Part shown: in pieces, positions 280 to 64,000 of the stretch
How the letters are laid out: the number at the start of each line of letters is the position of its first letter
Numbering within the stretch: the first letter of the stretch is position 1
Assembly: GCF_964194025.1 (NCBI RefSeq)
Contig: NC_134482.1
Location: forward strand, 38,750,001 to 38,814,000
Source: Convolutriloba macropyga
Lineage: Eukaryota
DNA length: 64,000 nucleotides
Direction of reading: 5' to 3'
Notes under the pieces: generated by a model
The model's input: only the letters and a program-made list of their open reading frames with translations
The model's database searches: none
What the model was told of the DNA's origin: nothing
Made by a program: the position numbers and the translations under genes

Positions 280-3200
280 ATGACTCATCTAGAAAACAAC
301 GGAATCATTGATTCCAGAAGTGAACAACCCCTATCTGCAAATGAACATGTCTAATTTGGAAGTGAACAACCCCAATCTCATGGACAAGTCCAATCTGGAA
401 GTGAGCGAGCTCAATCTCATGGACAAGTCCAATTTGGGGGTGGACAAACTCAATCTAGTGCTAGTAGCACAGCTATTCAAATGTTAGAAAAAAAACAAAC
501 CAAGGGAAGAAATCAAACCTGTAGATAAAGAAGAACAAAAGAGGGAAGCAGAAAAAGGTTTCAAAAGCAATCAGAAGGTTTAATCAAATGAATGAAGAAA
601 TAAAAGAGTTGCTCAGTCTAAAGATTCAGATAGAGATTCAAATTTAGACTCAGATAGAGTATCATCTTCATCTATTGATTTTATCTGTACTCAAAAACCA
701 AAAACTAATAAGTTTAAATGTGAAGCTTGCAATCAAGAATTAACTCAAAAGAATTATCATAGACACATTAAATCACTTAAACATAAAAAGAATGTACGAT
801 TATATAATAGAAATAAAATTATTGAGAGTGCTAATGAGGATTGAATAAAAGTTACTAATGAAGATACAGATTAAAAGATAGCTGAGCAGTATTCTGAACT
901 AAAGGGAATAAAGTATTGTGATAGTTGTGATATGTATCTTGAAAATAGTACTGCTTATAATAAACATGTGACAACATTAAAACATAAGAATAATTTAAGA
1001 CTAAATGATGGAGAGATAATAAAGAATGAAGATAGGTTTGAATGTATAACATGCAATACTAGTCTAAGTCAATATAGTGTGGAACAACATTTTAAATCAA
1101 AGATGCATCTAGATAATGTTGAGGGAATAACTAAAAAAATAACGAAAGAAAGCTCAGGTTATTGTGATATATGTAATACTAGATATAACAATAAAAATGA
1201 ACACATTGAATCAGTTGAACATGAAGAAAATGCTAAACAGAAAACACTCGTTGATAAGAAGTGTCGAGATAAAGTTAATGAATTAGGATTAGATCATAAC
1301 ATGAAGCATAATCAAATAATGATAACAAGTAGTAATTATGAAGATATTAAATTCTTGAATGTATTAGAGGCAATGTATAACATACATCCCCATATTAAGT
1401 TTAACACCTTTGATGTAGTTAGGTATACAAAATATACAGATGATAATTTAGAAGAAAACGAATTCACTTTTAGACTAATGACTAGACAATATAATGGTCC
1501 TCATGACTTGGATATGTTAATAAAGAACTAGAGAATAGAATGCGAGAACAAGAGATGAATCAATCTGGTCGGACTATGCGAAGATTTATCAAAAGAACAA
1601 TGTATTTACATAGTTTTTATCCAACAGGTGGATGTACGACTGAGTTACCATTCACATCTAGATATATAATTAATATAAAGAATACTGATAACAAATGTTT
1701 ATTGTGGTTTTTGATTGCTTATCTACATCCTGCTAAAGACCATCACTATAGAGTTGGTAATTATAATAAACCAGAATATTTTAATGAGATAAAACGACCA
1801 AAGACACCACCTACCTACTGACATAAAGATTTGCAGAAAATACAAGAAATGAATAAAGATAAAGTATTATTTAATGTGTTTAATCTAAACAAAAATAAAA
1901 CTAATAATCCTGTATTAATCAATCATAAGGATCATATAGGGTGTAATATACTATACTGGGATAATCATTATCTACTATGTAAAGATGTATCATTCTTATT
2001 CAGAAAATCACCTAAACAAAAATGTTATCCATGTCTAAAATGTTGTTTATCAATTATAACTGAACATGCATTAAATAAACATTTAGAGATGAGTAATAAC
2101 ACTGGAAGAATAACATTCCATAAAGATGAATATCTAAAGTTTGATAAGTTCCATTATAAGAACAGAGTACCATTTGCTATGTATTATGATTTTGAATGTA
2201 TAAAAAGATAGTCATTAATCAAAAAAAAAAAATAAAAAACATCTTCCCATTGCTTGTGGTTTATATATAAAAAGTGATTATCCTAAAATATTGGAGGATA
2301 AGTATGAATATTACTGTGGTGAAGATGTGGTTGATTCGTTTATAGGAAGGATGAGTTATTATAATAAATTGTTTAAAGATATCTTTAGTGTAAATATTCC
2401 AATGAAAGAAGAGATTATTACTCCACTTACTACTGAGTGTTTCTATTGTAGAGAGAACTTGGGTACTGACATTGTTAGAGATCACAATCATCTAACTGGT
2501 AAATTTAGAGATCATGCTCACAATAAATGTAACCTCCAAGCTAAGAATACATTTGTACCAATATATGCATTTAATTCTATTAATTATGATAATCATTTAT
2601 TTATAACTAAACTAGCAAAGAAGATTAGACTTAAAATATTAACTAAAACTGATGAGAATTATATTAGTTTTGATATGGGTTATGCAAAAGCATTAGATAT
2701 GTTTAGGTACTTCCATCCACTTAGCTTAGATGCTATAAGGAAAACATTGAGTAATAAAAAGTGTGTAACCTTAAACAAATTTGGGTTAGAGAGACGTAAA
2801 GGTATATTCCCATATGAATGGTTTGATAGTATAGACAAACTACATGAAACAACTTTACCACCTAAGGAAGCTTTCTATTCTAAGTTGAAACAAGGTGGTA
2901 TTACAGATAAATTACATAAGCAAGCAATAGATTGTTGGAATAATACTGGATGTAAGACAATAAAGGATTACATGATGTTATATCTTAAAACAGGTGTGTT
3001 ATCATCAGTAGATGTATTTGAGAAGTTTAGAGATAAGTGTTTAGAATATAATGAAATAGATCCTTGTTACACATATTCTACTCCTGGATTAACTTGGTTA
3101 TGTGGATTGAAATATACTAATGTTATAGTTAAATATTATAAAGAAAATACAGTTAAGATTTATGATACAATACAACATGGTATTAGAGGTGGGTTAGCTT

Positions 3201-4452
3201 CAGTATTAGGTGATTGTCATGTATAATGTAAAAATAAAGAAATAGATCCTGAATATACAGGGAAAGAGAAGTATTCAAAGTATTTAGACTTTAACTCATT
3301 ATACGCTTCTGCTATGGTTCAAGCTTTACCTACTGGTGAGATCAAAGTATGTAACAATCCAGAAACTGGTTTCGCAGATCTCAATTATACTAGATCTAGC
3401 TCTAATACTGGATATATCTATACCATTGATATAAAGTATAATGATGAGTTGAAACAGAAAACAAAGAAGTATTCATTCTTTCCTGAAAAGACTAAAACAA
3501 ACATTGATCAGTTTACAGATTATCAAAATGGAAACAAAAAGAAAGAATATAAACCTAATGAGAAGTTGATGTTAAAGTTAACAGATAAAGAAAACCATGC
3601 AATAGATGGAGAGATGTTTGATTGGTATTTAAGTAATGGTTTAAGATTGGTTGATATTACAATTAAGCATAAGTTAGAGTATAGTAAGAGTGAATGGTTA
3701 AAGCCTTATATTGAGTTTAATATTCAAAAAAGAAAGGAAGCTAAAGCTAAGGGTGATAAATTTGGAGACGTATTCTTTAAACTGAAGAATAATGCCTGCT
3801 ATGTAGAGTTAGTTAATGATGTAGATAGATATATTAAATTAGTAGAAAATATTAGTTTTAAATATGTTGTAGAGTTTGATGATGATCTAGTAGCTGTACA
3901 TAAATCAAGAAGTAATGTTAAGTTAGATAAGTTTAATTATATTGGTTTTGTTATATTAGAAAAAGCTAAACTGTTTATGTATAGAGCCATATATGAATAC
4001 TTCGAGAATGAGATAGATTGTAGTTATCATTACACAGATACTGATTATATATTTATAAACATAAATGTTCCATTGGATAGTACTATAGAAATAAAATGAA
4101 TAAGATAAAAGGTATATTGCATAATAATGAGTTAGGTAACATGAAAGATGAAATACCTAATGATACTACTATAGAAGCTTGTTTCCTTAAAACTAAATCA
4201 TATTGTTTTAATACAGTTAAAGGAGAAGAAAAGAAGTTAAAAGGAATAACTAAAGCTACTAATAGAAACCAAATTAATTTGGAAGACCATACTAATGCTA
4301 TATATGAAGGTAAAAGTAAATCTGTAACCAATTATACTATTGATAGCAAAAGGCATCATTTAGAAACTAAGGAACAGTATAACATAGCTATAGATCCATT
4401 TGATGATAAAGGTATTAAAAGTTGTAATGGTGAGTTCAGATTTTACAATTAA
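280..4452 (+). pseudogene. Fragmented protein-primed family B DNA polymerase (Polinton/Maverick/adintovirus type) with N-terminal C2H2 fingers and an endonuclease VII-like insertion
   Basis: Collinear motifs across broken ORFs: four CxxC...H...H fingers, IINIKNTDNKCLLW, PFAMYYDFEC (ExoI), CFYC..VRDHNHLTGKFR..AHNKCNL (EndoVII-like), YDNHLFI, RKGIFPYEW, GIRGG, YLDFNSLYASAM (motif A), KLKNNACY (B), YTDTDY (C), KLKGI; many stops and frameshifts. Confidence 0.9.
316..458 (+). repeat. ~39-bp tandem repeat (3-4 copies) at the 5' end of the PolB region
   Basis: Repeated gaagtgaacaaccccaatctcatggacaagtccaat (EVNNPNLMDKSNL). Confidence 0.6.
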
Positions 4453-21800: not shown

Positions 21801-22507
21801 GTGGAAAAAATGACTCCATCCTTTCCAAATATTCCAATCCAAGCCAATTTGACGAACGTAATTTTATTCCACAAGACGAAAGTTTTGAGGTTGCATGCGG
21901 AATCAACTGCACGAATCGGTCAATTTTGCCCGATTTAGGGGTCTGTCATTCACGTGCTCAAAACTGTGATAGAATGTTATTTTGCCTCTTCTATCAATTT
22001 TGAGCAATTTTCTACAAATCTTGTGTTACAGTGTTGCCACTAAAAACTGAAACAGAAATTTATATAATTTGATGAAAAATTGTTACATTTGCACTCAAAA
22101 GAGTGAATGAGATAAATAGGTGTTTTTTGCGGGGATTTTTTTTCATTTTTTTTTAAAAACCCAAGTTATAAAAAAAATTTGTAGAAAAAATGCGCAATTT
22201 GAACTAATTGGAGCGGACAAATTTGCTGTTAATGAGTGCTTATCTTTCAAAAACTCTCATGCTTTAGTTTATTTTTCAAAAACTGCGTTTTTGAAAATTG
22301 CTTGTTTTTCAAAAACTGCATTAATGTTTTAGTTTTTAGTTGAAAGAATCTCATTTAAAAACATATCCCTTGTCGAGTTTTTACCGCAAAAAAAGATCTA
22401 TGAAGAGGGGGTAATCGGGAAAATGTTTATCCAATTTCCCTCAAAACCCTTATATCATTTTGTGGAGTAATGCGGGGTAATCCGATTCAAGACTGGTTAT
22501 AATGATT

Positions 22508-22897
22508 GTCTGGACATGAACGCACGAAAGTCTGGACATGAACGCACGAAAGTCTGGTGAACGCACGAAAGTCTGGACATAAACGCACGAAAGTCTGGTG
22601 AACGCACGAAAGTCTGGTGAACGCACGAAAGTCTGTCGAACGCACGAAAGTCTGGACATGAACGCACGAAAGTCTGGACATGAACGCACGAAAGTCTGGT
22701 GAACGCACGAAAGTCTGGACATGAACGCACGAAAGTCTGGTGAACGCACGAAGGTCTGGACATGAACGCACGAAAGTCTGGTGAACGCACGAAAGTCTGG
22801 ACATAGGCACTTTCCGTCTGGGACGGTCTGGACATAGGCACTTTCCGTCTGGGACGGTCTGGACATATCGACTTTCCGTCTGGGACCTCAACCTGGG
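22508..22897. repeat. Minisatellite of 22-bp and 19-bp units, then three ~31-bp units, ending at a TCAACCTGGG transposon end
   Basis: GTCTGGACATGAACGCACGAAA and GTCTGGTGAACGCACGAAA units; GTCTGGACATAGGCACTTTCCGTCTGGGACG x~3. Confidence 0.9.
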
Positions 22898-25797: not shown

Positions 25798-28286
25798 TTA
25801 GGAAAGTTTAATGTTTTTGACACAACTAGGGAAATTGTTATAAGCAATTCTATTACGTAGCACAACATGCCCGAAGAGGCAGTTATGGTCAAAACACCGA
25901 TGGATTGAATAGCAATGGTAATCAAAAATGGAGTTGAAATTCAGGAGATCAATGTTGGAAGTTTCAGAAACAAGAAAACTCCGAGACTGTTCAGAGAATT
26001 TTGACGTTTTCAAGTACGAACCAAAGAAATAAAGCTCGTCGGAAATGTTGAGAATCTTTTCAATTTTCAGGAAATTTGGTTCATCAGTTTCGCAATTGTA
26101 GCTTGCAAAAACTGCATCTTGACACCTGAACAATACGCCGCATCTCAGGGCTCTCTTACATTCGTAGATCCATTCTAAATCGAAGCCCAATTGCATTTTG
26201 AAAACTGTTAGAGATTTCTCATGAAAAGCAACAGGAGTCGACACAAATTTTCCTGGTCAAAACTCAAGACCTTTGAGGTCTTTAGGCGAGCTCCAGTAAA
26301 CGTACTGCTGCAGTTGATGGCAATCAAGCATAGTTTTGTAAAGGTTTTTAAAATTACAAACAATATGTGCCAGTCGCTTAAAAAACTGATGTTTGCGTTC
26401 GTATTCCAAAACACATTGATGTATGAAAGGTCCTGATTTTTCTAAGACAGTCGGGTAGTGTAGTAGCCGGTGCTGTTTGAACACTATTGGTTGCTCTGGA
26501 AACAAGGGCTTAAACCATCGCAGGTGAGTAGCTAAAATGAAACTCCTTCAAAACAAAAGATTATAGCCCTATCGAGAGGGTGAGGTTGGGAATCAAAGTT
26601 AACACAGCAAAAATACCTTATGTTATTTTTCTGTCCACCCCCTTTATTGTTATATGCTGCTACAGATCTCACGAAAAAATTTATCTACTTACTAATCTGA
26701 TGGGACATGATAGCGAGATCAGATTCGAGAAACGACGGAGAGAGAAGCAGGTTGACCAATTCAAAATATTGAAGAAGTAATTGCCAATGTTCGTTGACTT
26801 CTGGAATTAGGTCACATATAATCAAGGGGAGAAATCTGAACAAAGTGAAGATCTGATCAGATTTTCCACGTATGCTGTGATCTTTGAGATCGCGAAGTCT
26901 GAATGTCAAAAAAGTGCTATGATTATAAAACTTTTAGTTAACTTATTAAGTCACAAGTTGATCTTACTTAATGATGTCAATTTCAGTAGGTTTACTATCT
27001 TTCTCTCTGGCGTATGCGAACGAGTTTAATCTGTAATTAAGCATGTCACATGAGAAAAATTTCTGAACAACAACTAATTGATGAAGAACCAATTTTACTG
27101 TATGCTGAACACCCCCTTCAAACAGATCGTGTTGTATATCTGTCGTCCAGTTTCTGTAACTACTAAAATAACTGGTTTCCAGATAGCATTTTCCTTTAAC
27201 GCTTTTTGATGGTCTCTGTGTGGATTGCGCTCTTTGTAAATGTCGCTCGAAACTCGAAACTTTACGAATCGGACAACTTGATTCAATGAGGTAATTGCTA
27301 AAGTTTTCAGCGCTAACAAAACATCTTTCGCAGCAAAAACCTTTCGCAAAGTTTTTGACAAAACCCAATGCAGAGTGATATTCTGCATTGTCTGCAACGA
27401 AAGAAAAATATGCACCGAGAACTGATATCGTAGAACCGCCTTTCGTTAAAACATTGAAAGGTCTTTACAGTTTTTTGAGGTCTTCACTTATTTTATCAAG
27501 AACGGGTTTATATCCATATCTGCACAAATCTAAAGTATTGCATAGGGCAACAACATTTACTTGATTTATTTGCGAATTGAGCCAGGGAGGCAAATTTTTC
27601 AAGATCCAATAGAAGCAGGTAACTTTATGAATGGAGTTGCGCGAACCAATTGGATTGCTTGGTTCAAAATCATCAGAGTAGAGCTGCAGACATAGTTTGA
27701 AAGAAAAGGATGTAGTTTCTATCTCAGCAAGGTGCTCGGAATTGCTCGGGGTCCCGTTTTCTTCAAACGTTTTGCACTGTTGCAAATCAACCAGCAAGTT
27801 GCCGTCTGTCATTTTTCTTAGAAAATTATTATAAGCCAAAATTTGCTCAACAATAGCGTCGTCTCTCAACATAACTTTTTTTATTACTTCAGAGATTGGA
27901 ACAAAATAGAAGTTGTGTTTCATTTGTACCTGCTTCGGCCTTCCATCTTTAAACATCGTTTCTTGTCGGCTGCCTAAATAAACTTCTTGAGCTGGAATAT
28001 GCACTTCCTTAGTTGCCAATAACTTTTGAATGTCCCTGACGTTTTTAATAGTTTTTAGACAATTATTATTGAGCAACGATGCAAGGCGTGAATAAATTGT
28101 TGAATCCTCTGGGACAATTTTTGATTCCGAGCTGATAAGTTCCAAAATCAACTTCATTGTTTGACTAAACAGTCCGCCAAAATGTTCAACGAAATCGAAA
28201 GCTTTTGTAATCGTTATTGAGGATGAAGATAGAACTTTGATTAAAACATCATCGCCTACAGAGCCACTTGTAATTTTTTCTAGCAA
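25798..28286 (-). pseudogene. EnSpm/CMC-type transposase, intron-containing and inactivated
   Basis: LYSDDFEPSNPIG..HK..FYW.LKNLPP, ADNAEYHSALGF...CERC, DIQHDLFEG, KQHRLLHYP..GP, EYERKH; in-frame TAA at 27465-27467; gtaag donors near 26964 and 26690. Confidence 0.85.
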
Positions 28287-40708: not shown

Positions 40709-43700
40709 TTATTGAAGGTAACTTTTGCATGAAATAGCTCCGTCCATAACAACCGAACTTCCGCTCATAAATTCAGCCTCACTCGATGCCATAAAGGTGA
40801 CCAAATTAGCGATCTCTTCTCCTCTGCCTATTTTTTCCATAGGATGAACTTTCCTTATTTTTTCATAAAATTCGTCCGCAAAGTCTTTGGGAAGGCCAGC
40901 GTTGGTACCAAATGACGTCACAACAACTCCTGAGTGGTTGATATTAAGCAATCACTGTATCGGTTTTTTGTCCTCCATTTTTTAAGAGTAAGCAATTATT
41001 TGTTTTACTTTGCAGAAGTGTGCTAGCTGGAAGAATCAAGAAAATTAAGTAGCAATTTATTGTTAAATAGTCAACAGTGATTAAAGTCAACGTTTTTTAT
41101 ACTTAATTTTCTTTTTTCTGAAGCGGAAATCACAGAGATAAATGCTTAAATGGGTTTCTAAAAAGTGTTTTTCGTCAAAAATTTTTTTCATCCTTGCAGA
41201 AATTTTTGTCGGAAAAACCTTCTAAAATACAATAAGCAACACAAAAAATAGAAGAATGAAAACAACTTCAGAAAATAATATTTGAAGAATGTGTCAAAAT
41301 ATCTTCATCTGATATTTTTGTATAATCTTTTATTGAGAAATTTTTGAGAAGGCTAAAACTTTAGCAAACTCTTAAATGTGATTGATCAAATATCGTTTTT
41401 ATTGCAAAGTATCTTGACTTTTTTTAATAATTGGTGTGGAGTTGTAGGTTTTAATTTTTATGTTGCCTGTCTGACTAATCGATGATAGCCGCAAACTCAT
41501 TTTTCAAATGAAAATGGAAACCACAAAAATTTCAAAACTAAAAAATTTTTAAATTAAGTGAACATTTAGTCAAAGACCAGTTGTGTAGATCCTTATGTTG
41601 TTTAGTTGTGCTGCTTGCTTCATGTCAGTTTATACTTTGAAACAAAATCTGAGAATAATATTTTTAGCTTGTTGACTGATCTTTGATATAAAAATTAATT
41701 GCTTGCTTCATTCTGAATATAACGGACAATAGATTTTAAGTACTTAAACATGAATTATTTTTTGCTCTGTGTAAACAACTTGAAAATAAACAAATGTGCT
41801 TGAGGCTTTTTGATAAATCCACGTTTTTCTTTACAAGTTAGTTTTCAATTTGATTTTTTGTCACATTACGAGCATCTACCGGAGAACTAAAGCTACCTCC
41901 AAAGAATGTGACTGGAACCGACTTCCGTTAAATGTGGAAAGAGCTTGAATTTTGTGAAAGTGGTTTCCACAAAGCAATTAAGCACCCCAAAAGGAAAAAT
42001 AGGTTGAAGTAAATTTGAAAAGTACTTACTACGTTCAGCTATAAAGGCATTTCACAAAAATTTACACCTCTTAATCCTTTTGTCATCCATTTTACGATTT
42101 TATCGATTTGATGTTTTGAGATTTCATAAATCAGGGAATATGTTGCAAGTAAGTTTTCACTTTTCATTTCCAGTTTAAAAATAGAGATTACCGACAAGAA
42201 TTTTTCTATAAGGAACAATTGAAAGTATGTTTCACGCGCACGATGCATTACAAAGGAAAAGTGAAATCTGGCAAAAGTCATTGTTAATCCTAGCAAAATC
42301 CGGAAAAGGAATAGCTCAAATTTGTTTTCCTTTTCCCTTCATTTCAAAAAAATTCCAACATTTAAGAAAGCAAGAATTTTCACACTATCAATCTCTATTT
42401 TCTTGAAAATTGAGTTGAAAATTGAGCTAAGATTCAATAATTGGTCAGCCACAAATCGGTCAGCTGCGTGGGCGGACAAATAGCATAGCTCAACCGAACA
42501 GTTGACATCGAAAAGGCTACAATCAAACTTAGCTTTATTTTGGTCAGCCGGCCAAACATTTAAGACACTTTAATGTTTTCTCAAACGTTTCTTCATAAAG
42601 AACTTAACTCGAGCAAGCTCTTTTCATGCCAATTGCATCTCGAACATTCTTTTTTAAGTATAGTTTTAAACCGGGTCATTTTAATTGTTGTAACGTTTCA
42701 GCGCCCGGTACCAAATTAGGGTCCCATTTGTTCCAATTTACCATTTGGTTATATACATTTTATCTTTTTAAACCCAAAAAACGTATTTTAATTTTCCCAA
42801 ATTAATTCCCAAATTTAGTGCAATGGTTATTATAATCAATTTGGCACGTGCGGTGGCTCGTAATTTTTCTTATCCGCTAACTCTTCAAAACTGGTCAGTG
42901 ATTGCTTGTTAGTTTTTCCTGGATTAATATTATTGGCGCGAATCCCATTTTTTCCTTCTTCAAGCGCGATGCATTTCGTGAACATATCTAGGGCCGCTTT
43001 GCTCATGCAATAATAGGCCATATTTTCTATCGGCGTCTGACCCAAAATAGATGAGTTATTAATGATGTTACCCTTCGTTTCCCGAAGATGGGGTATGCAA
43101 AGTTTAGTCAACCGAATAGCCGATTTCAGGTTGACATCAAAAACAGTTTCATAAGTTTCGATTGATTGGTCGGCTATGAAACCAAATATGGTCATTCCTG
43201 CATTGTTGAACAAAACGTCAATTCGACCAAACTTCTCAATGACGTCACTAACTATTTTTTCACATAATCCTTCTTTTCGAAGATCACCTGAAAAATTTAT
43301 GCTGTAGAAATGAATCCCCTTATTTTCATCCCGAATCATTTAATCCCGCATAGCTTAACCCCACATCGTCTAGCCCCCTCTATCATCCATTTAACCCATC
43401 TATCATTTAACCCCTCTATCATATCACACCTCTATCATTGAAAAAACAGGGGTAAAGCGATAGGGGGTTAAATAAATAGGGTAAAGAAGGTTATTATTTA
43501 GAATCATCGTGATTCGCAGTTTTTGAGTTTTCTTGATATTGTTATCAGAAATGTTAGTTAGAGAGCTTTTCATTGGTTTGTTTTCACTGCTGGATTATAA
43601 TTTCTCATAAAGAGGATTGGCAGAATAGAATCTTTCAAGCATCTAAATGTGAAATAGATTAAAAGTACTTAAAATTCCAAGCGTTTCAGTACTTTATTGT

Positions 43701-46700
43701 ACCTGCATTTTAAATAGCTATTAAAAAAGTAAGTGTTAAACGGTTTTTTTTTCATTGACACTATAAACAGATTGAAATGCTTCAGTTGCAGCTAGCACTA
43801 TTCAGAATGCGAATTCAACTAGACATTCGTCAAAAGTTTCTTCGGTTACAATCAAATTTTTTAAAATTATTATTTTATATTTTTTTAATTTCTCTAAATC
43901 AAGAGCACTATTTCTATTCCAACAGATTGTAATAATTATGAAAAATTGAAATGTAACTACTGCAAAGCAAAAATATCTTAAACTGGTTAGAAATGAAGAT
44001 TGAAAAAACGCTAAACAAAATGCGAACATTTTTGAGAATGATCATTTTTTCACTAAAATAATCAGGTTTAAATCATCTTTAAGTCTTTTCGATTGATACC
44101 TCATACTTGATTGAGAACAAAGAAAATCAGTTAGGTTATAAATGACATCAGAAGTTATATCTTTTAGGATCTCACCAGTAACTCCTAGGACAATATTTTG
44201 GGTGTTTTGATTAGAAAAGATTGTTCAAATTACTATAATGCAAACCCTAAGTTCTGCGGAAACTTTTACTGATTAAGCTCTTCAAGCGGCCGATTTATGA
44301 GGCAGATCTGCCGCGGTTGAAAATTTAATGCTTTATGAAAAATGAAGGGGTAGTTTTGGCTGATTTTACAAATAAATCATGTCTTCTATATTTCCGATTT
44401 CTTTTTGAGCAATTTGACTTTTCTTAGGTGATTATACTTGATACAATGACCTCTGAACTACTGTACCCTACTTATCTTTTGTAGGATACAAAATTTTAGA
44501 GGTCATTGTATCCTTCACCTTAGTCGAGACCGGATCATTATCTTGCAGGAATCTGTCAGATTTTGGCAGATAAATTATTAGCTTTCAAAACATGGGAGAA
44601 AAGTTCCTGCATCTGCCAAAAAATGGTTATCTGGCTCAATCTGCCAGAACAATGGCTATCGTGCGAATTTGGTTAGAAGGCGGAAAAGTGGTTATCTTGG
44701 ATGAGTCTCATAGAATTTTTTTTAAAAAAAATTAGAATTGAGCTTCATTATAATTAGCTGTTAATATCTAAGCTGCTCCTTTTGTGTTTTGATGAAATTA
44801 TATGCAGTAAAGTTGCTTTTTTATTGAATAAAAGAGCACAAAATGCTTACCAATGCTCGATAAAAAGTTGCTCGATATGATGATTTACGCAGAAATTTTT
44901 TAAAAATTGTTCATGTGGGTAATTTGCGCATAGTGTACACTGTACGCTTTTTCATTTTAAAAATTGCTATTTGTTTTTTAAAACGGATCACAGGCGAATT
45001 TTTTTTGGCTCTCAAACACCAAATATTCAAGCTATTTAACTCATTGCATCGTCTTTATTAAATTTGAACACAAGGTTTATTCGAATATTGCGAGGGTGAA
45101 GTAAAAGCGTTATGATACAGTACTATATTAAATCAGATAATCGGATTCCATAATCTGGTTGGTTATCTGGTAGGAATCTGGCAAAAAATTGGCAATTTTT
45201 TAATAATCCAATAGAAAACTGACTATTATGCATGAATCTTGCGGAAAATTGTGCCAGAATAGGCATCGTCTTGTGAGAATCTGCGAGAATTTGCCAGATT
45301 CCTACTAAATAAGCATCTTCTCTCGATTAGAGTGAATTTCATCATTATGAACCGGCCAAACATTTCCTGCTACACGAGAGCTGATGATTTTATGATCGCG
45401 TTTGGTAAACTTTTTAACGGGTAAGAGCAGATTTCGATCATAAATTTTGTTCAGCTTTTTCAAATTGCGGTGGATCAAAATAGTGTCAAAACAACATGAA
45501 TCCGCATAATATTATCAAAAGTTTGATATATAATCTTACTATTTGAATTAATTTGTCCCTCACTTTTCTTTGACTCCATCGTGCAAACGCTGTTGAACAA
45601 TCACGTGAATTCAACATCTTGTTGAACCCTTATCTTCGTTCCCAAAAGTTTCAGATATAACTGCAGAATTTTTTATGGAAATAAATCGTGAATCCGAGAA
45701 ACGTTTGGTATCATGAGACAAGATTAAAAGCGCTTCAATGATATATATGATTTTTCTTCTCTCAGTTTTAACGTTGACTGTTCTTTTGCTTGTTTTTAAC
45801 CACTTTTCCACCAATACATTAATTAAAGATTTGATCTCCAGATCTGGGTAAAAGATAAACTTGAAAAATAAATGTTTTTTTTTCTCATATGGTTTACTTT
45901 GATTGACCTCTGGCCTCTGTTTTTGCATTTTGATTTAGCACAAAGGTTGACACAAACTACCAATTCGTTGGCATTCAACTTCATCATTAGCATTCGATAT
46001 CTTTTTCAGTTAATTTTGATAGTTAATATTTAACCACGCAAAAGATAAGAATATAAAAAATCGGCAAAATCAAATGATCCTTTGACAGAGCTTTTATCTT
46101 TAGCAACAAAAAAATTAGGAAATATGGTTGACTTTCTTTTGTTTATATTAAGCAAACAGCTATCGTAGATAGATTCACAAAATCTCGGCTCTATAAAATT
46201 TACGTTATCTTGGAAAATTCATAAGCAATTTAGAAGAGATTCTTTTTAAGCGTAATTATTTTTTGCTTCATGAAAAAAAAGAGAGAACTCGGAAAATTTC
46301 ATCCGTTTTTGTTATTGACGGTAACCAAAATTGAAATATGTGTGATAGATTTTTTCTATAACAAGTATAATTAAACTTAAAATCGTTGATAATTACTGAC
46401 TGAAAATTCAATAAAGAACTCAAAATTTTTTTAGCTGACTTTGTGTACAAAAAGATAAAAAAAAACTGTTTTTATAAACGGTTTTTGTTATAGTAAAAGC
46501 TTTCATTATTAGGACAAATTTTTAAAAAGGTGAGAATTGAAAGGTCTATCTATAGAGTTCCGTGTAAGAGGTCCGTTCGCTCGTTATACAAACATTGGTT
46601 GAGATTCGCTACGGTAAAACCATGCTGTACATTCAATATATTGACATCAAAAAAAATTATGATCATTTAAAAAAGCCAGTATTGAGCATTAATGTTTCTT

Positions 46701-47608
46701 TTCTGATTTTCAGTGACGCTTAGCTCCGGAAACCAACTTAACCTAGACCACCTTTGTTTTGCAGAAATTATATTCTCTCAAGGGCATTCTACGATTCAGT
46801 TAGTAAATACTAGAACTGATGAGGATCATTTTTGTTCATTTCATGACTAGAAGTTACACCCAAAATGCAAAATTTCAAGACTTTTGTTTTCTCTGAGCCG
46901 AGAGCAAAATTATTTTTTTATCAGCCCCATTTATCAGCTCTAAGTGAAAAGTAATTCATATTTTATTTTTTTTTGTGCTATTATGTGCTGCTAACCAACT
47001 GTTCTTTTTTGAAGAATGGAATCAAGTAGTTTTATGTTTTTTTCAAAAGATCTATAGAATGCATTAAGGAGACCGTGTAGTGATTGCTTGCAAACCTGAT
47101 TCAAATTAAAACCAACTATGATTTGTATTTTCTCAATAAAACGTTATTTTTGAGTGGTTGCAAGATTTTTGAAGAAAATTTTACAGGACAATGCAAGACA
47201 ATGTTGCAATTTTGAAAAATTCAGTCAGGATCTTGCGAGATATTTTTTCTTTACCTAGAAGTCGAGTATAGTAAATTCAGTTTTTAAGACAAGTCCCTTC
47301 TTAAATGGTAATTCTAAATGCTTTTGCTAGAATAGACAACTCAAACATTGAAATGATTTATAACAACGCCAGCCATTAAAACAGTTTTTTGGAACCCTAA
47401 AACTTTGCAAGCCTTTCACTAATAAAACTTCAGCATCTTTGTTCACTGCTAGACAATCTTGTTTTGTCTTTTCCAATCCGTCTGTATTGCGACCATTGAG
47501 ACATAGTTTTGTGATTCCCTTTTCCACAAATTTCACAGCCGTGTCTTGTCCTATCCCAGAACTGGCTCCAGTTATAATCACCACTTTCTCATCAGAGAAC
47601 AGTTTCAT
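40709..47608 (-). CDS. Classical short-chain dehydrogenase/reductase (FabG-like), paralog 1; exons 47608-47413, 43287-42919, 40929-40709; 261 aa
   Basis: TGASSGIG, NNAG, catalytic S and YCMSK, NPG.V.T, P..KIG, G....DG; GRN after beta-2 suggests NADP(H) preference; introns GC-AG (4125 nt) and GA-AG (1989 nt). Confidence 0.9.
44440..44512. other. 73-nt near-perfect hairpin in SDR-1 intron 1
   Basis: gatacaatgacctct/agaggtcattgtatc 15-bp perfect stem extending to ~32 bp with a 9-nt loop. Confidence 0.7.
44518..45332. mobile_element. Diverged MITE-like element with CC(C)TAGTCGAGA-like ends
   Basis: ccttagtcgaga ... tctcgattagag; recurrent aatctg(c/g)cag motifs near both ends; no TSD seen. Confidence 0.45.
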
Positions 47609-56414: not shown

Positions 56415-58889
56415 TTATTGGAGACAACTTTTGCATGTAATAGCCCCGTCCGTAACAACAGAACTCCCACTCATGAAATCAGTTTCACTTGATGCTATGA
56501 AAGTGACCAAACTAGCGACATCTTGCGCATTTCCTATTCGCCCAATTGGGTGTTCCTTTGTTTGTCTGGCCCAGAATTCGTCAATAAATTCCTTAGGAAT
56601 ACCCGAGTTGACTCCAAAGGGTGTCCCAATAATACCTTCAAAATTGCGCCCAGCAGTCTTTATACCTGTCTGGTATAATGCAAAACACTTAACTTAATAA
56701 AAACTTTGTTGCTCATTTTTTCAGAACTTTTGAAATTACCAATTCATGATCGTGAACTGAAAAAAGAAAGTTAAACTAGCTGAGATTTTCACAACAATTA
56801 TTTAATATAATTGAGTGGTTAAACAATTCAGAAATACGAAGGGAAATTAAAGGTCTTTTTGAAGTAAAGGGTCGCTGATTAATTATATATGATAATTTGA
56901 CGTGCCACTAAGAAATGGTTTTAGAATTGTTTAAAGAAAATCTAATTATGAGATTTGATTGTCTCAAAATTAGAGGATCTTCCGATTCTGCACCCCCCCA
57001 AGCTTACTGGGCGCGTATTATTTGTGCCCCCCTCCCCAGACGCACGTGCTATATTTTTCATAATGATTTATTATGTAATGGCACGTGCTCTGCGTGCAAC
57101 TGGGGGTGGGGGGCACAAACGGAAAAGATCCAAATTAGATGACGATCAAATTGTAGTGGCCTTTTTATAACATTTTGATTCTTTTTCTATCCTTTTAGCC
57201 GAGATTTTTCTTTCATTTTTTGAGAGATTCCGCATGGCATGCAACTAATTTCACAATTTTTCAGAGAGAAATCTAGAAAAATGTGACGTGTTAAGAGCTC
57301 TGATGTATTATCAATACGAAAAACGCTTCTTTTCCATGATATTTCAGAAATGACGTTGTTTGTAATTGCTGAGCGTTTTTTCCCTGGATTCACGTTGTTG
57401 GCACGAATCCCGTTTTTTCCTTCCTCAAGTGCAATGCATTTCGTGAACATATCCAGGGCCGCCTTACTCATGCAATAAAATCCCATATTTTCCACTGGAG
57501 TTGTTGCCAAAACCGACGAGTTATTTACAATATTACCTTTGGTCTCACGTAAATAAGGAATACATAATTTGGTCAAACGAATCGTGGATTTGAGATTGAC
57601 ATCAAAAATGGTGTCGTAAGTTTTGATTGGTTGATCGGAGAGAAGACCAAATATGGTAAACCCAGCATTGTTGAATAAAATGTCAATACGACCAAATTTC
57701 GCGATGCAGTTGTCAACTATTTTTTCACATAGTCCTTCAGTGAGCAAGTCACCTGAAAAAATATTTGAAGTGATTCCTGATTGTCGAATTTCTTTTTGTA
57801 AAATGAAAACAAGTTTTTGTTTTTCAAACTCTTTATTGTACTTAACGTACTAACATTTTCCTACATTTAAAACCAAAGACAATAAAGATTTAAGTTTTCA
57901 AAAAACATACAGAGCTCTTCTTCAGCAAAAAAAACTTTTTTTCCGTAGAAGTTTGATGCTACCAACGTTCAATCATTCTTTGTTTCGAAGCCAAAAACAC
58001 ATTGAACTTCCTACAAATTGGTCCCTTTTTTCGGTCTCTTGGATTAAAAATGCAACTGCAATTCACGAAAAATGTTTGATTGAATTCTACACAGGGGACC
58101 AATTCTTCCATGAACTACAACCTAAAAGAAAACTTAATTAATTGTATTCCTTAGCTAGATTCAATTTAGACTAGATAAAAATTGTAAACGTAGCTATGAT
58201 CCTGAACGTCTTGAAAAATTTTGCTGTGCGGCAAAAAAATCAGAGAAGATCAAGAAAATTCTTGCAGCGTACACTAAACCACAATAATATCAACAAGATT
58301 ATTCAAGAAAAAATTGTTTTCCTGTCTCCTGATGTTGCTATCAATTAATTTTACAATAATCAGAACTCGATTTAAATTTGAACTCTTCGTTTGTACTAAA
58401 TTGATGTTGTCGATAAATCAATTGCGCTTTTTATTATCACAATTTATATAAGTCAGAATAGAAAGCTTTCGAAGCAATTGGCAAATTTTAAATTAAAATT
58501 TATTGGACATATAATGTATTGAAAAACTTTAATGAAATACTGGGTCAATTTGAGCATATTTTCAAAGTCAGTTCAAAATTAGTTGAGCATATTTTTAGTT
58601 TTTTCAAAGTCTTAAGAAAAATCAGAACCTCCGAAGTCAAAACTTAGACGCTGAAAGTTCTGAGTCCTAATGTCAAAAGAAGAGCAAGCTAACCTTGAAC
58701 CAATAAAACTTCAGCATCTTTGTTGGCCGTTAGGCAATCTTGTTTTGTTTTTTGTAGTCCTTCTATGTTGCGACCATTGAGACAGAGTTTTGTGATTCCC
58801 TTTTCCACAAATTTCACAGCCGTCTCTTGTCCTATTCCAGAACTAGCTCCAGTTATAATCACCACTTTCTCATCTGAGAACAGTTTCAT
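56415..58889 (-). CDS. Classical SDR, paralog 2; exons 58889-58694, 57752-57384, 56635-56415; 261 aa
   Basis: Same motifs and exon lengths (196/369/221) as paralog 1; exon 3 hand-translated IIGTPFGVNSGIPKEFIDEFW...HPIGRIG...GSSVVTDGAITCKSCLQ*; introns GT-AG (941 nt) and GG-AG (748 nt). Confidence 0.9.
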
Positions 58890-60279: not shown

Positions 60280-63200
60280 TCCTCCCGCCTTTTTAAAGCA
60301 AGTTTGTGAGTATAAGTTCTCAAAATATGTCGGGTTGTTTTCTATATGTAGTGTTATAGCTTAGGTTAGCTATTTGAATTGGAAGAGTAGAGTGATTACA
60401 CTATATTGAATCTATTGTGGAATCGCAGGGCGAATCCTGAATTATGTGTGTTTTACTAAATTCGCTCAATGGAATCGCAAGGCGAATCCAGATTAAGTTA
60501 GACTTGAGTAAATAAGAAGCGATTACAGAGACAACTTGAATTCAAGAGATTAATCGAGATTAAGCTTACTTAACATAAAATACTATGAAATACAAACTAT
60601 GAAATAAATTAGTAGACTAGCGGGAATATAGTTATATGTGAGTAATAAAAGTCATCATAACCTTAGTTATAAAACGCATGATATAAATATTAAAATAGAG
60701 GGTAATTAATAATTTAGTACACACAAAGATTTCGATATATATTTATGTATCCATAGTTATCACATTTCCCCCATGACAGGAAAAAATTGTGTTATGTATT
60801 TACAATTTTTTAGAAAGAATCAACACAAATAAATTAAATGTGTGGAAAAGAATGAACAGTACAAGTGTCAGAATCATTTGTGGAAAAGCGCCACGATTGT
60901 AAAATTAAATAAACGGGAAGGCATTATTTTATGCATTTGTAGAGCAAATACATGTTGAGAAATATGAGTGCACAAGCAGTGGAGATACTATTGAATACTA
61001 TATGGATGGAACTGCTTGGCGGATGCAGCAATTATAATTTTAAAACACAACGAAAATGGGATTCGCAGAGCGAATACAGATAAGAATTGCAGTTGAGGAA
61101 ATGGGAAATAAAATTAATGAATAAATGAAACATAAATACAAAAAATTGCATTCGCAGAGCGAATACATGACTGAATTTAAAAGGAATGGTTTTTTCAACA
61201 GTTTTGAAGTTTTATCAATTGTCCTTAAATTTTTTGTTCTCAGCATCCCATACTGACATCTCTCTTTCCTGTTCATATTCATAGTAACGAATTCGGGAGT
61301 CGGGTGGAGATACTTGACCAACTTCAATATCGGGCCTTGGTGGAGAGGGAACTCGAGATTGTTCGGCACTTTGAAATAAGGCAAATACCGATTCTTCGGT
61401 GGCTGAACTTTTCTTGCTTTGTTTTTTCGTCTTGCGTTTCTTTGATTTGGAAGGGTTAGCAGTTGTCAAAGAACCAGTCGGGGAAATATCTGCCTCCGTA
61501 AAGCCGTAGAGTTGTTGTCGTTTTCGTTTCCGCCCTTCGTTCTGTGATGCAGTATCTGATACCAGTGACGATTCGAGTTGTTCTTGATGTGGTGGTACTG
61601 GCGGAGCGGGTACTGATGAAGGTCCAGGTTGATCTTGAGATGCACTTTCACTGGGTTCGTTCGGAGGGGCTGTGGTTCGTCTACGTTTAGGTTGTGGCTT
61701 GGAGGGTTTGCGAACGGTTAAAGCAGGGTTGACGTTGGAATTGACGGATGAAAACTACTGATGTGGTGTCGCGTTGTCGGTGACGTATTTTGATTTCTCC
61801 ATTTTCTGTTTTTTCAAGTCATTGCTATGCTTGGCTATTTTTCTTTCTGTTGTTTGTTCATATGGGGCGGGTCTGCGCTGTGCGTAAGTCCACATATTTG
61901 TAGCGCGCTTCGCTTTAGTGCCAAGTTTTGCCAAATCACTGTCCCGAACTTTTACAGGTGCTCGTCCTGGCTCGTTGATGATTGTTGTCGTTGTGGAGGA
62001 TTTGGTCACCTACGATCCAGGTTTGAGTACTTCGTACAAGCCAGCGAGTCGTCTTTTTGCTCTCTTCTTTTTGGGCAGTTTTCTGGCAAGTTTGATGTTT
62101 AAAGAGGCCTCAGTTCTGTGAATGGGGTTCGAAATTTTGGGATGGATTATGAATCGGGATTCCTTGTTATCGGAATCACGATAGCGGCGGCCTGCGTCCT
62201 GTTGTGCCCGACACATATTTTTCTCAATATCCAAATCGCTCCTATCAGGATTGACCCAGCCCAACTCGTCGAGGAAATCATCTGCGGTGACCGTGTCGGC
62301 ATCTAAATAGGGGTTAAAAATTTTTTCATAAGTTAGATTTAGACTCGAAGGAACAGTACTAATATTCTTTAAAGACGTATTTGCAGGGCAACCAAAATGA
62401 GCTTCGAACGGTGTTATCTTTGTGGTTTTCTGTTCTGTTAGAAGGAGGTCTGAAATAATCTGTTTAATTACAGTAGAAGTAGCAAAGGTTTCTTTATTCT
62501 CAGCTTTCTTGCAGGATAGACGCCTTTTTATTGTTTGAATCATTCGCTCCACTAATCAATTAGCCCTATGATCACCTACATGAGCGTCGAGAATGTCAAT
62601 GTTATTTTCATTGCAGTAACTTGTAACTTGTTTACCTACTAGACAGGTGGCTTGATCTAAACGTATTGTTCGCGGAATCCCATGATTATATGCATATTCT
62701 CGGAGAAATTTAACGACATTGGTCCCATTAACATTTTCAAAAATCACAACTGTGGGGTACTTTGAATAACGATCGATACATGTTAAAAAGTAGATTTCTT
62801 TATCTTTTTCATTCAATATTGGACCACCAAAGTCAATTTGAATTTCCTCATTAGGTTCTTGACATAATTTATATGGATGCCACTTAGATTTAGGGATGAT
62901 AGGTTTGAGTTTCTTATCAATATCTGTACACGGAACACAATCGGAAGTTTTCGCAAGAATTTCCCTATGCATGTAGGGCCACCATGCATATTGGGATAAT
63001 GAGATCATCCCCCAACTTCCTGGATGCCTCATATGGATTGGCTCGATTACAGCATCTTTGATCGAGTTCGGGATCGCGACGCGTTCGTCGACGCAAAAGC
63101 ATCCGGACTTAACGTGAAGGTCCTTCCAGAAAGAGTGGATGTAGTGGCTGACCTCTTTATATCTAGCCTCGTCGTCTTGCATCACACAGTCCCTGACTTC

Positions 63201-64000
63201 CTTTAGAACAGCATCCTTGCTGGTGAGAACTGCGGGGAAGGACTTTGTGAAGAGTTGATTTAAATTATTTTCGAAAATCTCCTCACGGGATAGCTCAATG
63301 TCTCGGTGTTCGGGTGATGAAGAGGCCTGGGTTTTGTTGATGCTTGCACTAGTGTTTGTATTTGGCGTGGATTGTGCTGTGAAGGTGACTCGGGGAGTTT
63401 GCGGTGAAGCTGAGGGATTGTTTTGAGCGGACTCATTAGCAGACATTGGGATATGATTTACGTTAGTGCTAGTATTGGTGGTTGAATTGAGCTTTAAACT
63501 TTGTGACTGGATTTGCGGAGCGGATACAGTATTGATTTTGAGCAAATGATTTGCGTGACAATTGAAGTTAGAAAAGTCAATTGAAGTTAGAAATTATTTA
63601 CTTTTGCTAGAGTAGTGAGTGAGTTATTTGAGGTATTTGGAGTATGTGCGCTGCTTTTAGCAATTTTGCAAGAGTGAACGCGAGTCTTGTTTACTTGGAA
63701 CTGACTTTTGCTGGTAGGGTGCCGCTTTTGCAATGGAACTTTGTTTGAGTGACTAAATAAAGTTGCAACTGCGTCGCGAATGCGGGAAATTGTAGATACC
63801 ATGAATTCCTCATCGTATTGAGTAATGCTTTTTGCTTTCTGATTTGGTTGTCGCGAAATATAATCAACTAATCTTATTTTAGTGCCAAGGATATGTTCTA
63901 TATTAAAATCAGAGGGTAGTAAACGATCTATCCACCGTGTTAATCGACTATTATAGGATTTATTTGAACGATGAGATTTTAAAACTGAAAGAAGCGCTCT
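59779..64000 (-). mobile_element. Ty3/Gypsy LTR retrotransposon, 3' part (RNase H end, integrase, 3' region), disrupted
   Basis: RWIDRL..DFNIEHI.G....VDYISR at the window end; integrase H..H.G...WWP.M...C..C zinc finger, QIDFGGP, IDRYSKYP, HGIP..IRLDQ, ERMIQTIK, TPFEAHFG; in-frame stops. Confidence 0.9.

What the first reader, a model, noticed from the sequence alone, without database searches (positions are those of the whole stretch)
56636..57383. Paralogous GG-AG intron retains an end-pairing stem with compensatory changes (SDR-2 intron 2)
The same intron position reads CCAG|ggaaaaaa...ttttgaag|GT. Intron nt 9-17 CGCUCAGCA (57375-57367) pairs with UGCUGGGCG (56655-56647; 9 bp, one U-G), ending 11 nt before the acceptor, with AAAA/UUUU able to extend it outward. 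The AGCA/UGCU core is shared with paralog 1, while the adjacent pair changes from A-U to C-G and the stem extends in the opposite direction. I see no similarity in the rest of the intron (748 vs 1989 nt). Pairing conserved without sequence argues for selection on structure.
Basis: partly seen in the sequence, partly recalled or inferred. Interest (0 to 1): 0.85.

Follow-up and report, generated by a model that had tools for sequence, protein, structure and literature searches.

The report
Non-GT intron zipped by conserved stem
An intron in a dehydrogenase gene of the acoel worm Convolutriloba macropyga is spliced out even though it starts with GG instead of GT. Its two ends are joined by a base-paired stem kept in all seven gene copies, so RNA structure may help define splice sites here.

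Summary
Confirmed and extended. The window matches the acoel Convolutriloba macropyga. An RNA-like run holds a contig (depth 48) that joins 56634|57383 and skips exactly 748 nt. None of the four equivalent placements gives GT, GC or AT at the 5' end; only GG..AG ends in AG. DNA-like runs carry the same GG donor.

Alone it is only marginal (P about 0.02-0.15). I fetched five more family copies. All seven have an intron at the same Gly codon of the NPG motif, all read CAG|G[A/G]A...AG|G, and all have an end stem at the homologous place.

Synonymous sites among the five deep lineages are saturated, and the introns are otherwise unalignable. The 16 stem columns are 81% paired, against 26-46% for slid controls and 69% for non-cognate arms. 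Nine columns changed on both sides. Whole-intron folding gives the stem probability near 1 in six of seven copies. Eight canonical introns of the same or homologous genes show no such stem.

Best reading: a spliceosomal intron of the Eurytemora GA/GG-donor type, with a selected end-zipping helix descended from an ancestral inverted repeat of about 16 nt, possibly transposon ends. Genome-wide generality and functional need remain untested.

The scan had already noted the paralog's stem on this same window.

The parts
58694..58889 (-). SDR-2 exon 1 (Met to first base of Gly66; TGASSGIG cofactor motif)
   Evidence: ORF and tblastn; intron 1 joint in RNA contig; full 261-aa ORF rebuilt
57753..58693 (-). 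SDR-2 intron 1, canonical GT..AG, 941 nt, T-rich tract before the acceptor, no end stem (control)
   Evidence: Joint 57750|58692 read with cut +2 as CT..AC on the + strand; end duplex only -5.1 kcal/mol
57384..57752 (-). SDR-2 exon 2, ending ...AAT CCA G (Asn-Pro-Gly of the SDR NPG motif)
56636..57383 (-). SDR-2 intron 2, 748 nt, phase 1, GG..AG. Equivalent placements are AG..GA, GG..AA and GA..GG; none is GT/GC/AT at the 5' end.
   Evidence: RNA contig joins 56634|57383, depth 48, 173 nt on the shorter side, 3 ambiguous bases; no variant in DNA-like runs
57367..57375 (-). 5' arm of the end stem, CGCUCAGCA, intron nt 9-17
   Evidence: pair probability 0.87-1.0 in the whole-intron ensemble; in MFE and centroid
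56647..56655 (-). 3' arm of the end stem, UGCUGGGCG, ending 11 nt before the acceptor AG
56415..56635 (-). SDR-2 exon 3 including the TAA stop
40930..42918 (-). Paralog SDR-1 intron 2, GA..AG, 1989 nt, same codon and phase. Its 12-bp end stem is AAGCAAUCACUG (42907-42896) with CAGUGAUUGCUU (40957-40946).
56975..57145 (.). Palindromic MITE-like high-copy repeat inside intron 2; not part of the end stem
   Evidence: Summed contig word depth 1.8-2.9e5 against about 38 for flanking DNA in DNA-like runs; inverted arms I2

Best explanation
This is a genuine, constitutively removed intron of a short-chain dehydrogenase gene in the acoel Convolutriloba macropyga. Its donor is G-G, and G-A in paralogs, instead of G-U.

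Shown: the 748 nt are absent from mRNA. All seven family copies read CAG|G[A/G]A at the donor and AG|G at the acceptor. Six of the seven acceptors have no T-rich tract like the one before intron 1's acceptor (L1a has a five-T run). All carry a 9-15-bp helix that joins a site 7-11 nt inside the 5' end to a site 10-18 nt before the 3' end. That helix has persisted, with changes on both sides, through divergence that saturated synonymous sites and erased all other intron similarity.

Inferred: the intron is removed by the major (U2-type) spliceosome with relaxed reading of position +2, as proposed for Eurytemora affinis GA/GG donors. The helix acts as a zipper. It holds the weak donor next to the branch and acceptor region, turning a 0.5-2 kb intron into an effectively tiny one. 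This would compensate for weak signals at both ends.

Inferred, weaker: the helix began as the terminal inverted repeats of a DNA transposon whose insertion created this lineage-specific intron. It was later kept for its RNA-level effect.
For: Junction: (RNA contig at depth 48; exon-only depth bins; unchanged genomic GG in DNA-like runs).

Family-wide donor, acceptor and stem: seven copies; duplex -18 to -24.5 kcal/mol.

Selection:
- dS is 1.1 to saturated among the five deep lineages.
- blastn finds no intron similarity among them, apart from one short patch between L2x and P0003 that looks like a shared repeat.
- The arms are islands of 54-57% identity between flanks of 23-36%.
- The 16 core columns are 81% paired, against 26-46% when slid and 29-36% in the flanks.
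- No derangement of arms among lineages (0 of 44) reaches the observed pairing.
- Nine columns changed on both sides, including a G-C, G-U, A-U series.
- All three substitutions separating the recent pairs (W_SDR2/L1a, SDR-1/L1b) keep pairing through wobble.

Thermodynamics: pair probability is about 1.0 across 0.5-2 kb in six of seven copies and 0.55 in the seventh. The stem is in the MFE and centroid folds.

Contrast: eight GT/GC introns of the same or homologous genes give -5 to -13 kcal/mol. Those of the family genes have T-rich acceptors.

Spliceosomal character: G+1, A+3, the exon-end AG and the 3' AG are invariant. The Pro codon is CCA in 7/7 despite saturated dS. This matches the E. 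affinis rule of obligate exon-end AG and A at +3 (PMC5714493). Spacers from stem to splice sites vary (7-11 and 10-18 nt), so the cut sites are not measured from the helix.

Lineage-specific origin: more distant paralogs in the same genome are intronless. Lottia and another assembly have introns at other codons, and a third assembly has none.
Against: - All seven stems descend from one ancestral intron, so this is one evolutionary case. I could not show that other non-GT introns in this genome carry stems.
- No experiment shows that the helix forms in vivo or matters for splicing.
- Two competing helices exist. One is a perfect 9-bp local hairpin (intron nt 4-12 with 57-65) that would form first during transcription. 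The other is an 8-bp GC-rich internal partner for the 3' arm.
- The branch point is unknown.
- E. affinis GA/GG introns were described without any such helix.
- RNA evidence is a single assembled contig from one run, and contigs drop minor isoforms.
- Transposon origin is weak. No other copies of the repeat occur in 174 kb of this genome, the intron ends have single-copy word depth, and the AGG direct repeat at both junctions is forced by the codon and the splice consensus.
Confidence: 0.55

Rival explanations
1. The arms are kept for some other RNA-level or sequence-level role and do not help splicing. Examples: binding sites for a protein, stabilising or circularising the excised intron, or regulating expression.
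For: Both arms are partly conserved in sequence: the AGCAAU core, 54-57% identity. No functional data link the stem to splicing. Non-cognate arms still pair at 69%.
Against: A single RNA-binding protein would not need its motif in sense near the 5' end and antisense near the 3' end. Pairing (81%) exceeds what arm conservation alone gives (69%, 0 of 44 derangements), with double-sided changes and tolerated G-U. The helix sits just inside both splice sites in every copy. It co-occurs with weak donors and acceptors and is absent from the canonical introns of the same genes.
Confidence: 0.2
2. The intron is removed without the spliceosome and the helix is the recognition element, as proposed for Euglena nonconventional introns.
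For: There is no GT, GC or AT donor, most copies lack a T-rich acceptor tract, and the helix joins the intron ends. Euglena nonconventional introns need end pairing (PMC12501133).
Against: G at +1, AG at the 3' end and CAG|G exon context are invariant in 7/7 copies, which is typical of spliceosomal chemistry. Spacers between helix and cut sites vary (7-11 and 10-18 nt). Euglena uses fixed spacers of 3 and 5-6 nt with a CAG/CTG motif. No bulge-helix-bulge or IRE1-type loops lie at the junctions.
Confidence: 0.1
3. The inverted repeat is a neutral relic of the terminal inverted repeats of the transposon that created the intron and has no present function.
For: The layout resembles transposon-derived introns of Amoebophrya and Fritillaria: an 8-20-nt inverted repeat plus a 3-5-nt direct repeat at the boundaries (PMC7789003, PMC11282704). 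The intron position is lineage-specific.
Against: Synonymous sites are saturated and the rest of the intron is unalignable. Even the 10-18 nt between the 3' arm and the acceptor are at random-level identity (25%). Yet a helix survives in all five deep lineages. Each is at about the 2-3% tail of the null, so the joint probability is of order 1e-8 if decay were neutral.
Confidence: 0.07
4. The stem in SDR-2 is a chance match in AT-rich sequence.
For: For a single intron, a 9-bp helix with GU allowed occurs in 15% of random 40x40-nt pairs from this window.
Against: The helix is at the same homologous position in seven of seven copies, with pair probability near 1 in whole-intron folds. Slid controls give 26-46% pairing against 81%.
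Confidence: 0.01

Closest known systems
GA and GG donor introns of the copepod Eurytemora affinis (Robertson 2017, PMC5714493; also noted by Frey and Pucker 2020, PMC7072748)
   Same: G at +1 with A or G at +2, obligate AG at the end of the upstream exon, A at +3, ordinary AG acceptor. The introns are constitutive and needed for the reading frame, and they break automated gene models.
   Different: The organism is an acoel, not an arthropod. No end-pairing helix was reported for E. affinis, where recognition was left unexplained. The genome-wide frequency here is unknown.
Transposon-derived non-canonical introns: Amoebophrya introner elements and Fritillaria borealis MITE-derived introns (PMC7789003; PMC11282704 citing Henriet 2019)
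   Same: An 8-20-nt inverted repeat links the 5' and 3' ends of the same intron, a 3-5-nt direct repeat overlaps the boundaries, the borders are non-GT, and the position is lineage-specific.
   Different: Those are recent, repetitive families with many similar copies and highly variable dinucleotides. This is a single old intron inherited through gene duplication, with a fixed G[A/G]..AG rule and single-copy ends. Its repeat is kept by selection with compensatory change long after any transposon signal decayed.
Euglena nonconventional introns (PMC12501133)
   Same: Non-GT borders and a need for pairing between the intron ends; purine at the first base of the downstream exon.
   Different: Euglena uses a 3-nt CAG/CTG-type motif at fixed spacers (3 and 5-6 nt), has sliding boundaries, and probably uses non-spliceosomal machinery. 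Here the helix is 9-15 bp, the spacers vary, and G+1 and AG-3' are invariant.
Structure-bridged introns of budding yeast ('zipper' stems between the 5' splice site and the branch point).
   Same: A long-range helix shortens the effective distance between splice signals in an otherwise long intron.
   Different: The yeast introns have canonical GU donors and strong branch sites. Here the branch point is unknown and the donor is non-GU.

Membership tests
Canonical U2-type GT-AG / GC-AG intron | GT or GC as the first two intron bases | tested here: not met
   The four placements allowed by the RNA joint give AG, GG, GG or GA at the 5' end. All seven paralogs have GG or GA.
U12-type (minor) intron | 5' consensus [A/G]TATCCTT and branch consensus TCCTTAAC near the 3' end | tested here: not met
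   The 5' ends read GGAAAAAA, GAAAAACT, GGAATTAT and GGAAATTT. No TCCTTAAC-like motif is in the last 50 nt.
Eurytemora-type GA/GG donor intron | G at +1, A or G at +2, AG acceptor | tested here: met
   7 of 7 copies; SDR-2 junction confirmed by RNA contig.
Eurytemora-type GA/GG donor intron | Obligate AG at the end of the upstream exon and A at +3 | tested here: met
   CAG| and +3 A in 7 of 7. The Pro codon is CCA in all copies despite saturated dS.
Eurytemora-type GA/GG donor intron | Constitutive splicing, needed for the full-length protein | tested here: met
   Splicing gives an intact 261-aa SDR with the NPG motif. X6 shows no intron coverage apart from the repeat. Contigs can hide minor isoforms.
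Eurytemora-type GA/GG donor intron | Common genome-wide (about 10-12% of introns) | not testable with these tools
Transposon-derived intron (introner / MITE-derived) | Inverted repeat of 8-20 nt between the two intron ends | tested here: met
   9-15-bp helices in seven copies, aligning to an ancestral repeat of about 16 nt.
Transposon-derived intron (introner / MITE-derived) | Target-site duplication at the boundaries | tested here: inconclusive
   AGG is repeated at both junctions in 7 of 7 copies. The Gly codon and the AG|G splice consensus force this repeat anyway.
Transposon-derived intron (introner / MITE-derived) | Many similar copies at unrelated loci (a repeat family) | tested here: inconclusive
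   No other copy of the repeat occurs in 174 kb of this genome. The intron ends have single-copy word depth. An old, decayed family cannot be excluded.
Euglena nonconventional intron | CAG/CTG-type complementary motif at fixed spacers (3 nt from the 5' end, 5-6 nt from the 3' end) | tested here: not met
   Spacers are 7-11 and 10-18 nt and vary among copies.

The most novel reading that the evidence does not exclude
Convolutriloba macropyga, and perhaps acoels more widely, may have a sizeable class of non-GU (GA/GG-AG) introns whose splice sites are paired by a selected long-range helix rather than by the usual donor and T-rich-tract signals. That would be structure-assisted intron definition in a bilaterian animal. 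It could also explain how Eurytemora-type GA/GG donors are recognised, and why this genome annotates poorly.
Probability: 0.3. Interest if true: 0.85.

Novelty: new variant of a known kind. Interest (0 to 1): 0.62.

Why it matters
Three things follow if this holds.

1. How spliceosomes accept GA/GG donors is an open question; it was left unexplained for Eurytemora. This gene family is a natural series of five independently diverged versions of one such intron. All keep an end-zipping helix, which gives a concrete cis element to test by arm mutation and compensatory rescue.

2. It is a rare case where covariation supports a long-range (0.5-2 kb) helix in an animal pre-mRNA.

3. It has a practical cost. 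Four of the five public models of this family mis-place this intron; for SDR-2 this adds 27 residues inside the conserved NPG motif. Non-GT introns may therefore degrade annotation and completeness scores for this genome.

I found no report of non-GT introns in acoels in the searchable literature.

Tried and rejected
- I first guessed the copepod Eurytemora affinis from the GA/GG donors. The protein search rejected this and showed Convolutriloba macropyga.
- Canonical alternatives (AAC|gtgaat...ccag|ACA, and the public model's gtcatt...ttaag) are rejected, because RNA depth stops exactly at the non-canonical junction.
- A donor polymorphism is rejected, because DNA-like runs carry GG.
- Rfam found nothing in the gene or the window, so no known intronic RNA explains the stem.
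- I considered spill-over of gene conversion from the exons. The 3' tail lying between the arm and the exon is at random identity, and exon dS is saturated, so I rejected it.
- A search for the repeat as a transposon family found nothing beyond the SDR introns in 174 kb.
- I tried to find orthologous introns in other species. Searching exon 2 alone found only homologues with a GT-AG intron 12 codons upstream, or with no intron.
- I tried to test generality on other genes. The window and fetched loci hold mostly transposon ORFs.
- The repeat finder misses the terminal stem because of the U-G pair.

Full report
**1. What is at the coordinates**

The region lies in a three-exon, minus-strand gene for a classical short-chain dehydrogenase/reductase (SDR):
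- exon 1, 58889-58694
- intron 1, 58693-57753
- exon 2, 57752-57384
- intron 2, 57383-56636
- exon 3, 56635-56415

Joined, these give an intact 261-aa protein with the TGASSGIG, YCMSK and NPG motifs.

Intron 2 splits the Gly codon of NPG and reads CCAG|GGAAAAAA...TTTTGAAG|GT. Intron nt 9-17 (CGCUCAGCA, 57375-57367) pair with UGCUGGGCG (56655-56647).

**2. Is the intron really removed there?**

Yes. Of the runs that hold this DNA, X1-X3 cover exons, introns and spacers evenly at about 38x, so they behave as DNA. X6 covers exons only, so it behaves as RNA.

- X6 has a 422-nt contig at depth 48 that joins 56634 to 57383 and skips 748 nt, with three ambiguous bases.
- On the minus strand the intron can therefore be written AG..GA, GG..AA, GG..AG or GA..GG. 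It cannot be written GT, GC or AT at the 5' end. Only GG..AG ends in AG.
- The X6 depth bins (13.3 and 6.09) equal 48.2x over just 24 and 11 exon bases. Coverage therefore stops at the junctions.
- The same run shows intron 1 as an ordinary GT..AG.
- The DNA-like runs carry no variant at either splice site, so the GG donor is genomic and not a strain difference.

**3. Organism and public models**

The protein search identifies the source as the acoel Convolutriloba macropyga. The exon-encoded parts of the public SDR-2 model P0001 map exactly onto the window.

- P0001 (288 aa) uses a GT..AG pair inside the real intron. This adds 27 residues inside the NPG motif.
- P0002 uses a GT donor 60 nt downstream of the real one.
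- The P0005 and P0004 models imply odd boundaries.
- Only P0003 is annotated with the true GA..AG intron.

**4. The family**

I fetched two more loci of this genome. Together with the window they hold seven copies: SDR-2 and SDR-1 in the window, L1a (P0002) and L1b (P0005) on a 75-kb contig, and L2x (P0009), P0003 and P0004 on the same chromosome as P0001.

- All seven have an intron at the same codon and phase.
- All read CAG|G[A/G]A at the donor and AG|G at the acceptor.
- The Pro codon before the donor is CCA in all seven.
- Six of the seven intron 2 acceptors have no T-rich tract like the TTTTTCAG-type one of intron 1 (L1a has a five-T run). Intron 1 of these genes has GT donors, or GC in SDR-1.

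This donor pattern is the one described for Eurytemora affinis GA/GG introns: obligate AG at the exon end and A at +3 (PMC5714493).

**5. The stem in every copy**

| Copy | 5' arm | 3' arm |
|---|---|---|
| SDR-2 | CGCUCAGCA | UGCUGGGCG |
| L1a | CGCUCAGCA | UGUUGAGCG |
| P0004 | UCGCUCA.UAAU | AUUG.UGAGCGA |
| P0003 | CUCAGCAGUCAUU | AAUGAUUGUUGAG |
| SDR-1 | AAGCAAUCACUG | CAGUGAUUGCUU |
| L1b | AAGCAAUCACUG | CGGUGAUUGCUU |
| L2x | GACAAGCAAUU | AAUUGCUUGUC |

- End-duplex energies are -18.0 to -24.5 kcal/mol.
- Eight canonical introns give -5.1 to -12.7. Five are intron 1 of family genes and three are GT-AG introns of SDR homologues in other assemblies.
- In partition-function folds of the whole introns (522-1989 nt), the terminal helix has pair probability about 1.0 in six copies and 0.55 in P0003.
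- The tool's own fold of the 748-nt intron shows the helix in both the MFE and the centroid.

**6. Chance, relic or selection?**

Alone, the SDR-2 stem is weak evidence. In random 40x40-nt pairs from this window, P(helix >= 9 bp) = 0.15 and P(dG <= -18) = 0.023. The family decides the matter.

- The protein tree gives five deep lineages plus two recent pairs.
- Among deep lineages dS is 1.1 to saturated.
- blastn finds no similarity between their introns, apart from one short patch between L2x and P0003 that looks like a shared repeat.
- A joint alignment of the 5' arms with the reverse complements of the 3' arms places all 14 arms on one core of about 16 nt, close to CGCTCAGCAATCACTG. The stems are therefore remnants of one ancestral inverted repeat, and different copies keep different parts of it.
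- Among deep lineages the arms are 54-57% identical. The inner flanks are 23-36% identical, and the tail between the 3' arm and the acceptor is 25%. That pattern excludes spill-over from the exons.
- In the 16 core columns, 81% of cells pair. Sliding the partner by 1-3 columns gives 26-46%, and the flanks give 29-36%.
- Swapping 3' arms among lineages gives 69 +/- 5% (maximum 79.5%). None of the 44 derangements reaches the observed value.
- Nine columns show changes on both sides, including C-G/U-A, C-G/A-U, U-A/C-G and a G-C, G-U, A-U series.
- All three substitutions that separate the two recent pairs keep pairing through wobble.

Together this shows purifying selection on the helix. Pairing is kept better than sequence, and G-U is tolerated, which points to the RNA level rather than to a DNA-level inverted repeat.

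**7. Origin**

- More distant SDR paralogs in the same genome are intronless.
- Lottia has an intron two codons upstream.
- Another assembly (ERZ25071366) has a GT..AG intron 12 codons upstream, and a third has none.

The NPG intron is therefore specific to this subfamily. An inverted repeat close to both ends plus an AGG direct repeat at both junctions resembles the transposon-derived non-canonical introns of Amoebophrya and Fritillaria (PMC7789003, PMC11282704).

The evidence for a transposon is nevertheless thin. The AGG repeat is forced by the codon and the splice consensus. No other copy of the repeat occurs in 174 kb of this genome. The intron ends have single-copy depth. I rate a transposon origin at about 0.4.

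**8. Mechanism**

Shown: removal at a non-GT donor, an invariant CAG|G.A...AG|G frame, and a selected helix just inside both ends.

Inferred:
- Removal by the major spliceosome with relaxed reading of +2, as suggested for E. affinis.
- The helix brings the weak donor next to the branch and acceptor region. Only 7-11 plus 10-18 unpaired nucleotides then separate the two splice sites, which offsets weak signals at both ends.
- The spacers vary, so the cut sites are not measured from the helix. This argues against a Euglena-like, non-spliceosomal route with fixed spacers (PMC12501133).

Caveats:
- A perfect 9-bp local hairpin (intron nt 4-12 with 57-65) and an 8-bp internal partner for the 3' arm compete with the stem and could form first during transcription.
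- The branch point is unknown.
- All seven stems are one evolutionary origin.
- The RNA evidence is one assembled contig.

**9. Novelty**

GA/GG donors are known as a genome-wide feature in E. affinis and Oikopleura (PMC5714493, PMC7072748). Inverted repeats at the ends of non-canonical introns are known from Amoebophrya, Fritillaria and Euglena.

I found nothing on non-GT introns in acoels, and nothing on a conserved, covarying end helix attached to Eurytemora-type donors. I class this as a new variant of a known kind.

Whether it is a general rule in this genome could not be tested.

Noticed in passing
window 56975-57145 (inside SDR-2 intron 2): A palindromic, MITE-like element with G/C-run arms (TTTGTGCCCCCC... 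/ ...GGGGGGCACAAA). Its summed contig word depth in DNA-like runs is 1.8-2.9e5, against about 38 for flanking DNA, so it is an extremely abundant repeat. It accounts for most of the intron's fold z-score of -6.8.
   Followed up: partly
window 56636-57383, and L001/L002 gene models: Four of the five public models of this SDR family mis-place intron 2. P0001 and P0002 use internal GT donors. P0005 and P0004 imply odd boundaries. Only P0003 carries the GA-AG intron. Non-GT introns may lower annotation quality for this genome, which one preprint lists among low-BUSCO assemblies.
   Followed up: partly
window 57319-57380 and 56646-57014: Two competing helices. Intron nt 4-12 (AAAAACGCU) pair perfectly with nt 57-65. 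The 3' arm region (CUGGGCGC) has an 8-bp GC-rich partner next to the internal repeat. Equilibrium folding still prefers the terminal stem, but folding during transcription might not.
   Followed up: partly
window 42908-42913 (SDR-1 intron 2, nt 6-11): A perfect branch-site-like ACUAAC lies at the 5' end of the SDR-1 (and L1b) intron, just before the 5' arm. Its significance is unknown.
   Followed up: no
window 43295-47411 (approx.; SDR-1 intron 1): SDR-1 intron 1 has a GC donor (AAAG|GCTTGC) where the other copies have GT. It has no end stem (-12.7 kcal/mol). So the gene pair in the window uses GT, GC, GA and GG donors.
   Followed up: partly
window 22450-22891 and L002 49862-50418: A tandem repeat gives long ORFs in several frames (PDFRAFMSRLSCVH-like units). 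It is present both in the window and near the P0004 gene, so it is a dispersed minisatellite.
   Followed up: no
window 932-4452, 25798-28286 and 61040-63545: Transposon-like coding remnants. There is a string of large ORFs at 932-4452, and similar ORFs occur in L001 at 19.8-23.2 kb. More unassigned large ORFs lie at 25.8-28.3 kb. At 62.0-63.5 kb the ORFs look retroelement- or integrase-like by eye; no domain search was run on them. Besides the two SDR genes the window holds little host coding sequence.
   Followed up: no
L003/L004 6001-6786 and L005 6001-6774: Two more distant SDR paralogs of the same genome (47% identical) are intronless single exons. Either the intron-bearing subfamily gained its two introns, or these two are retrogenes.
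   Followed up: partly
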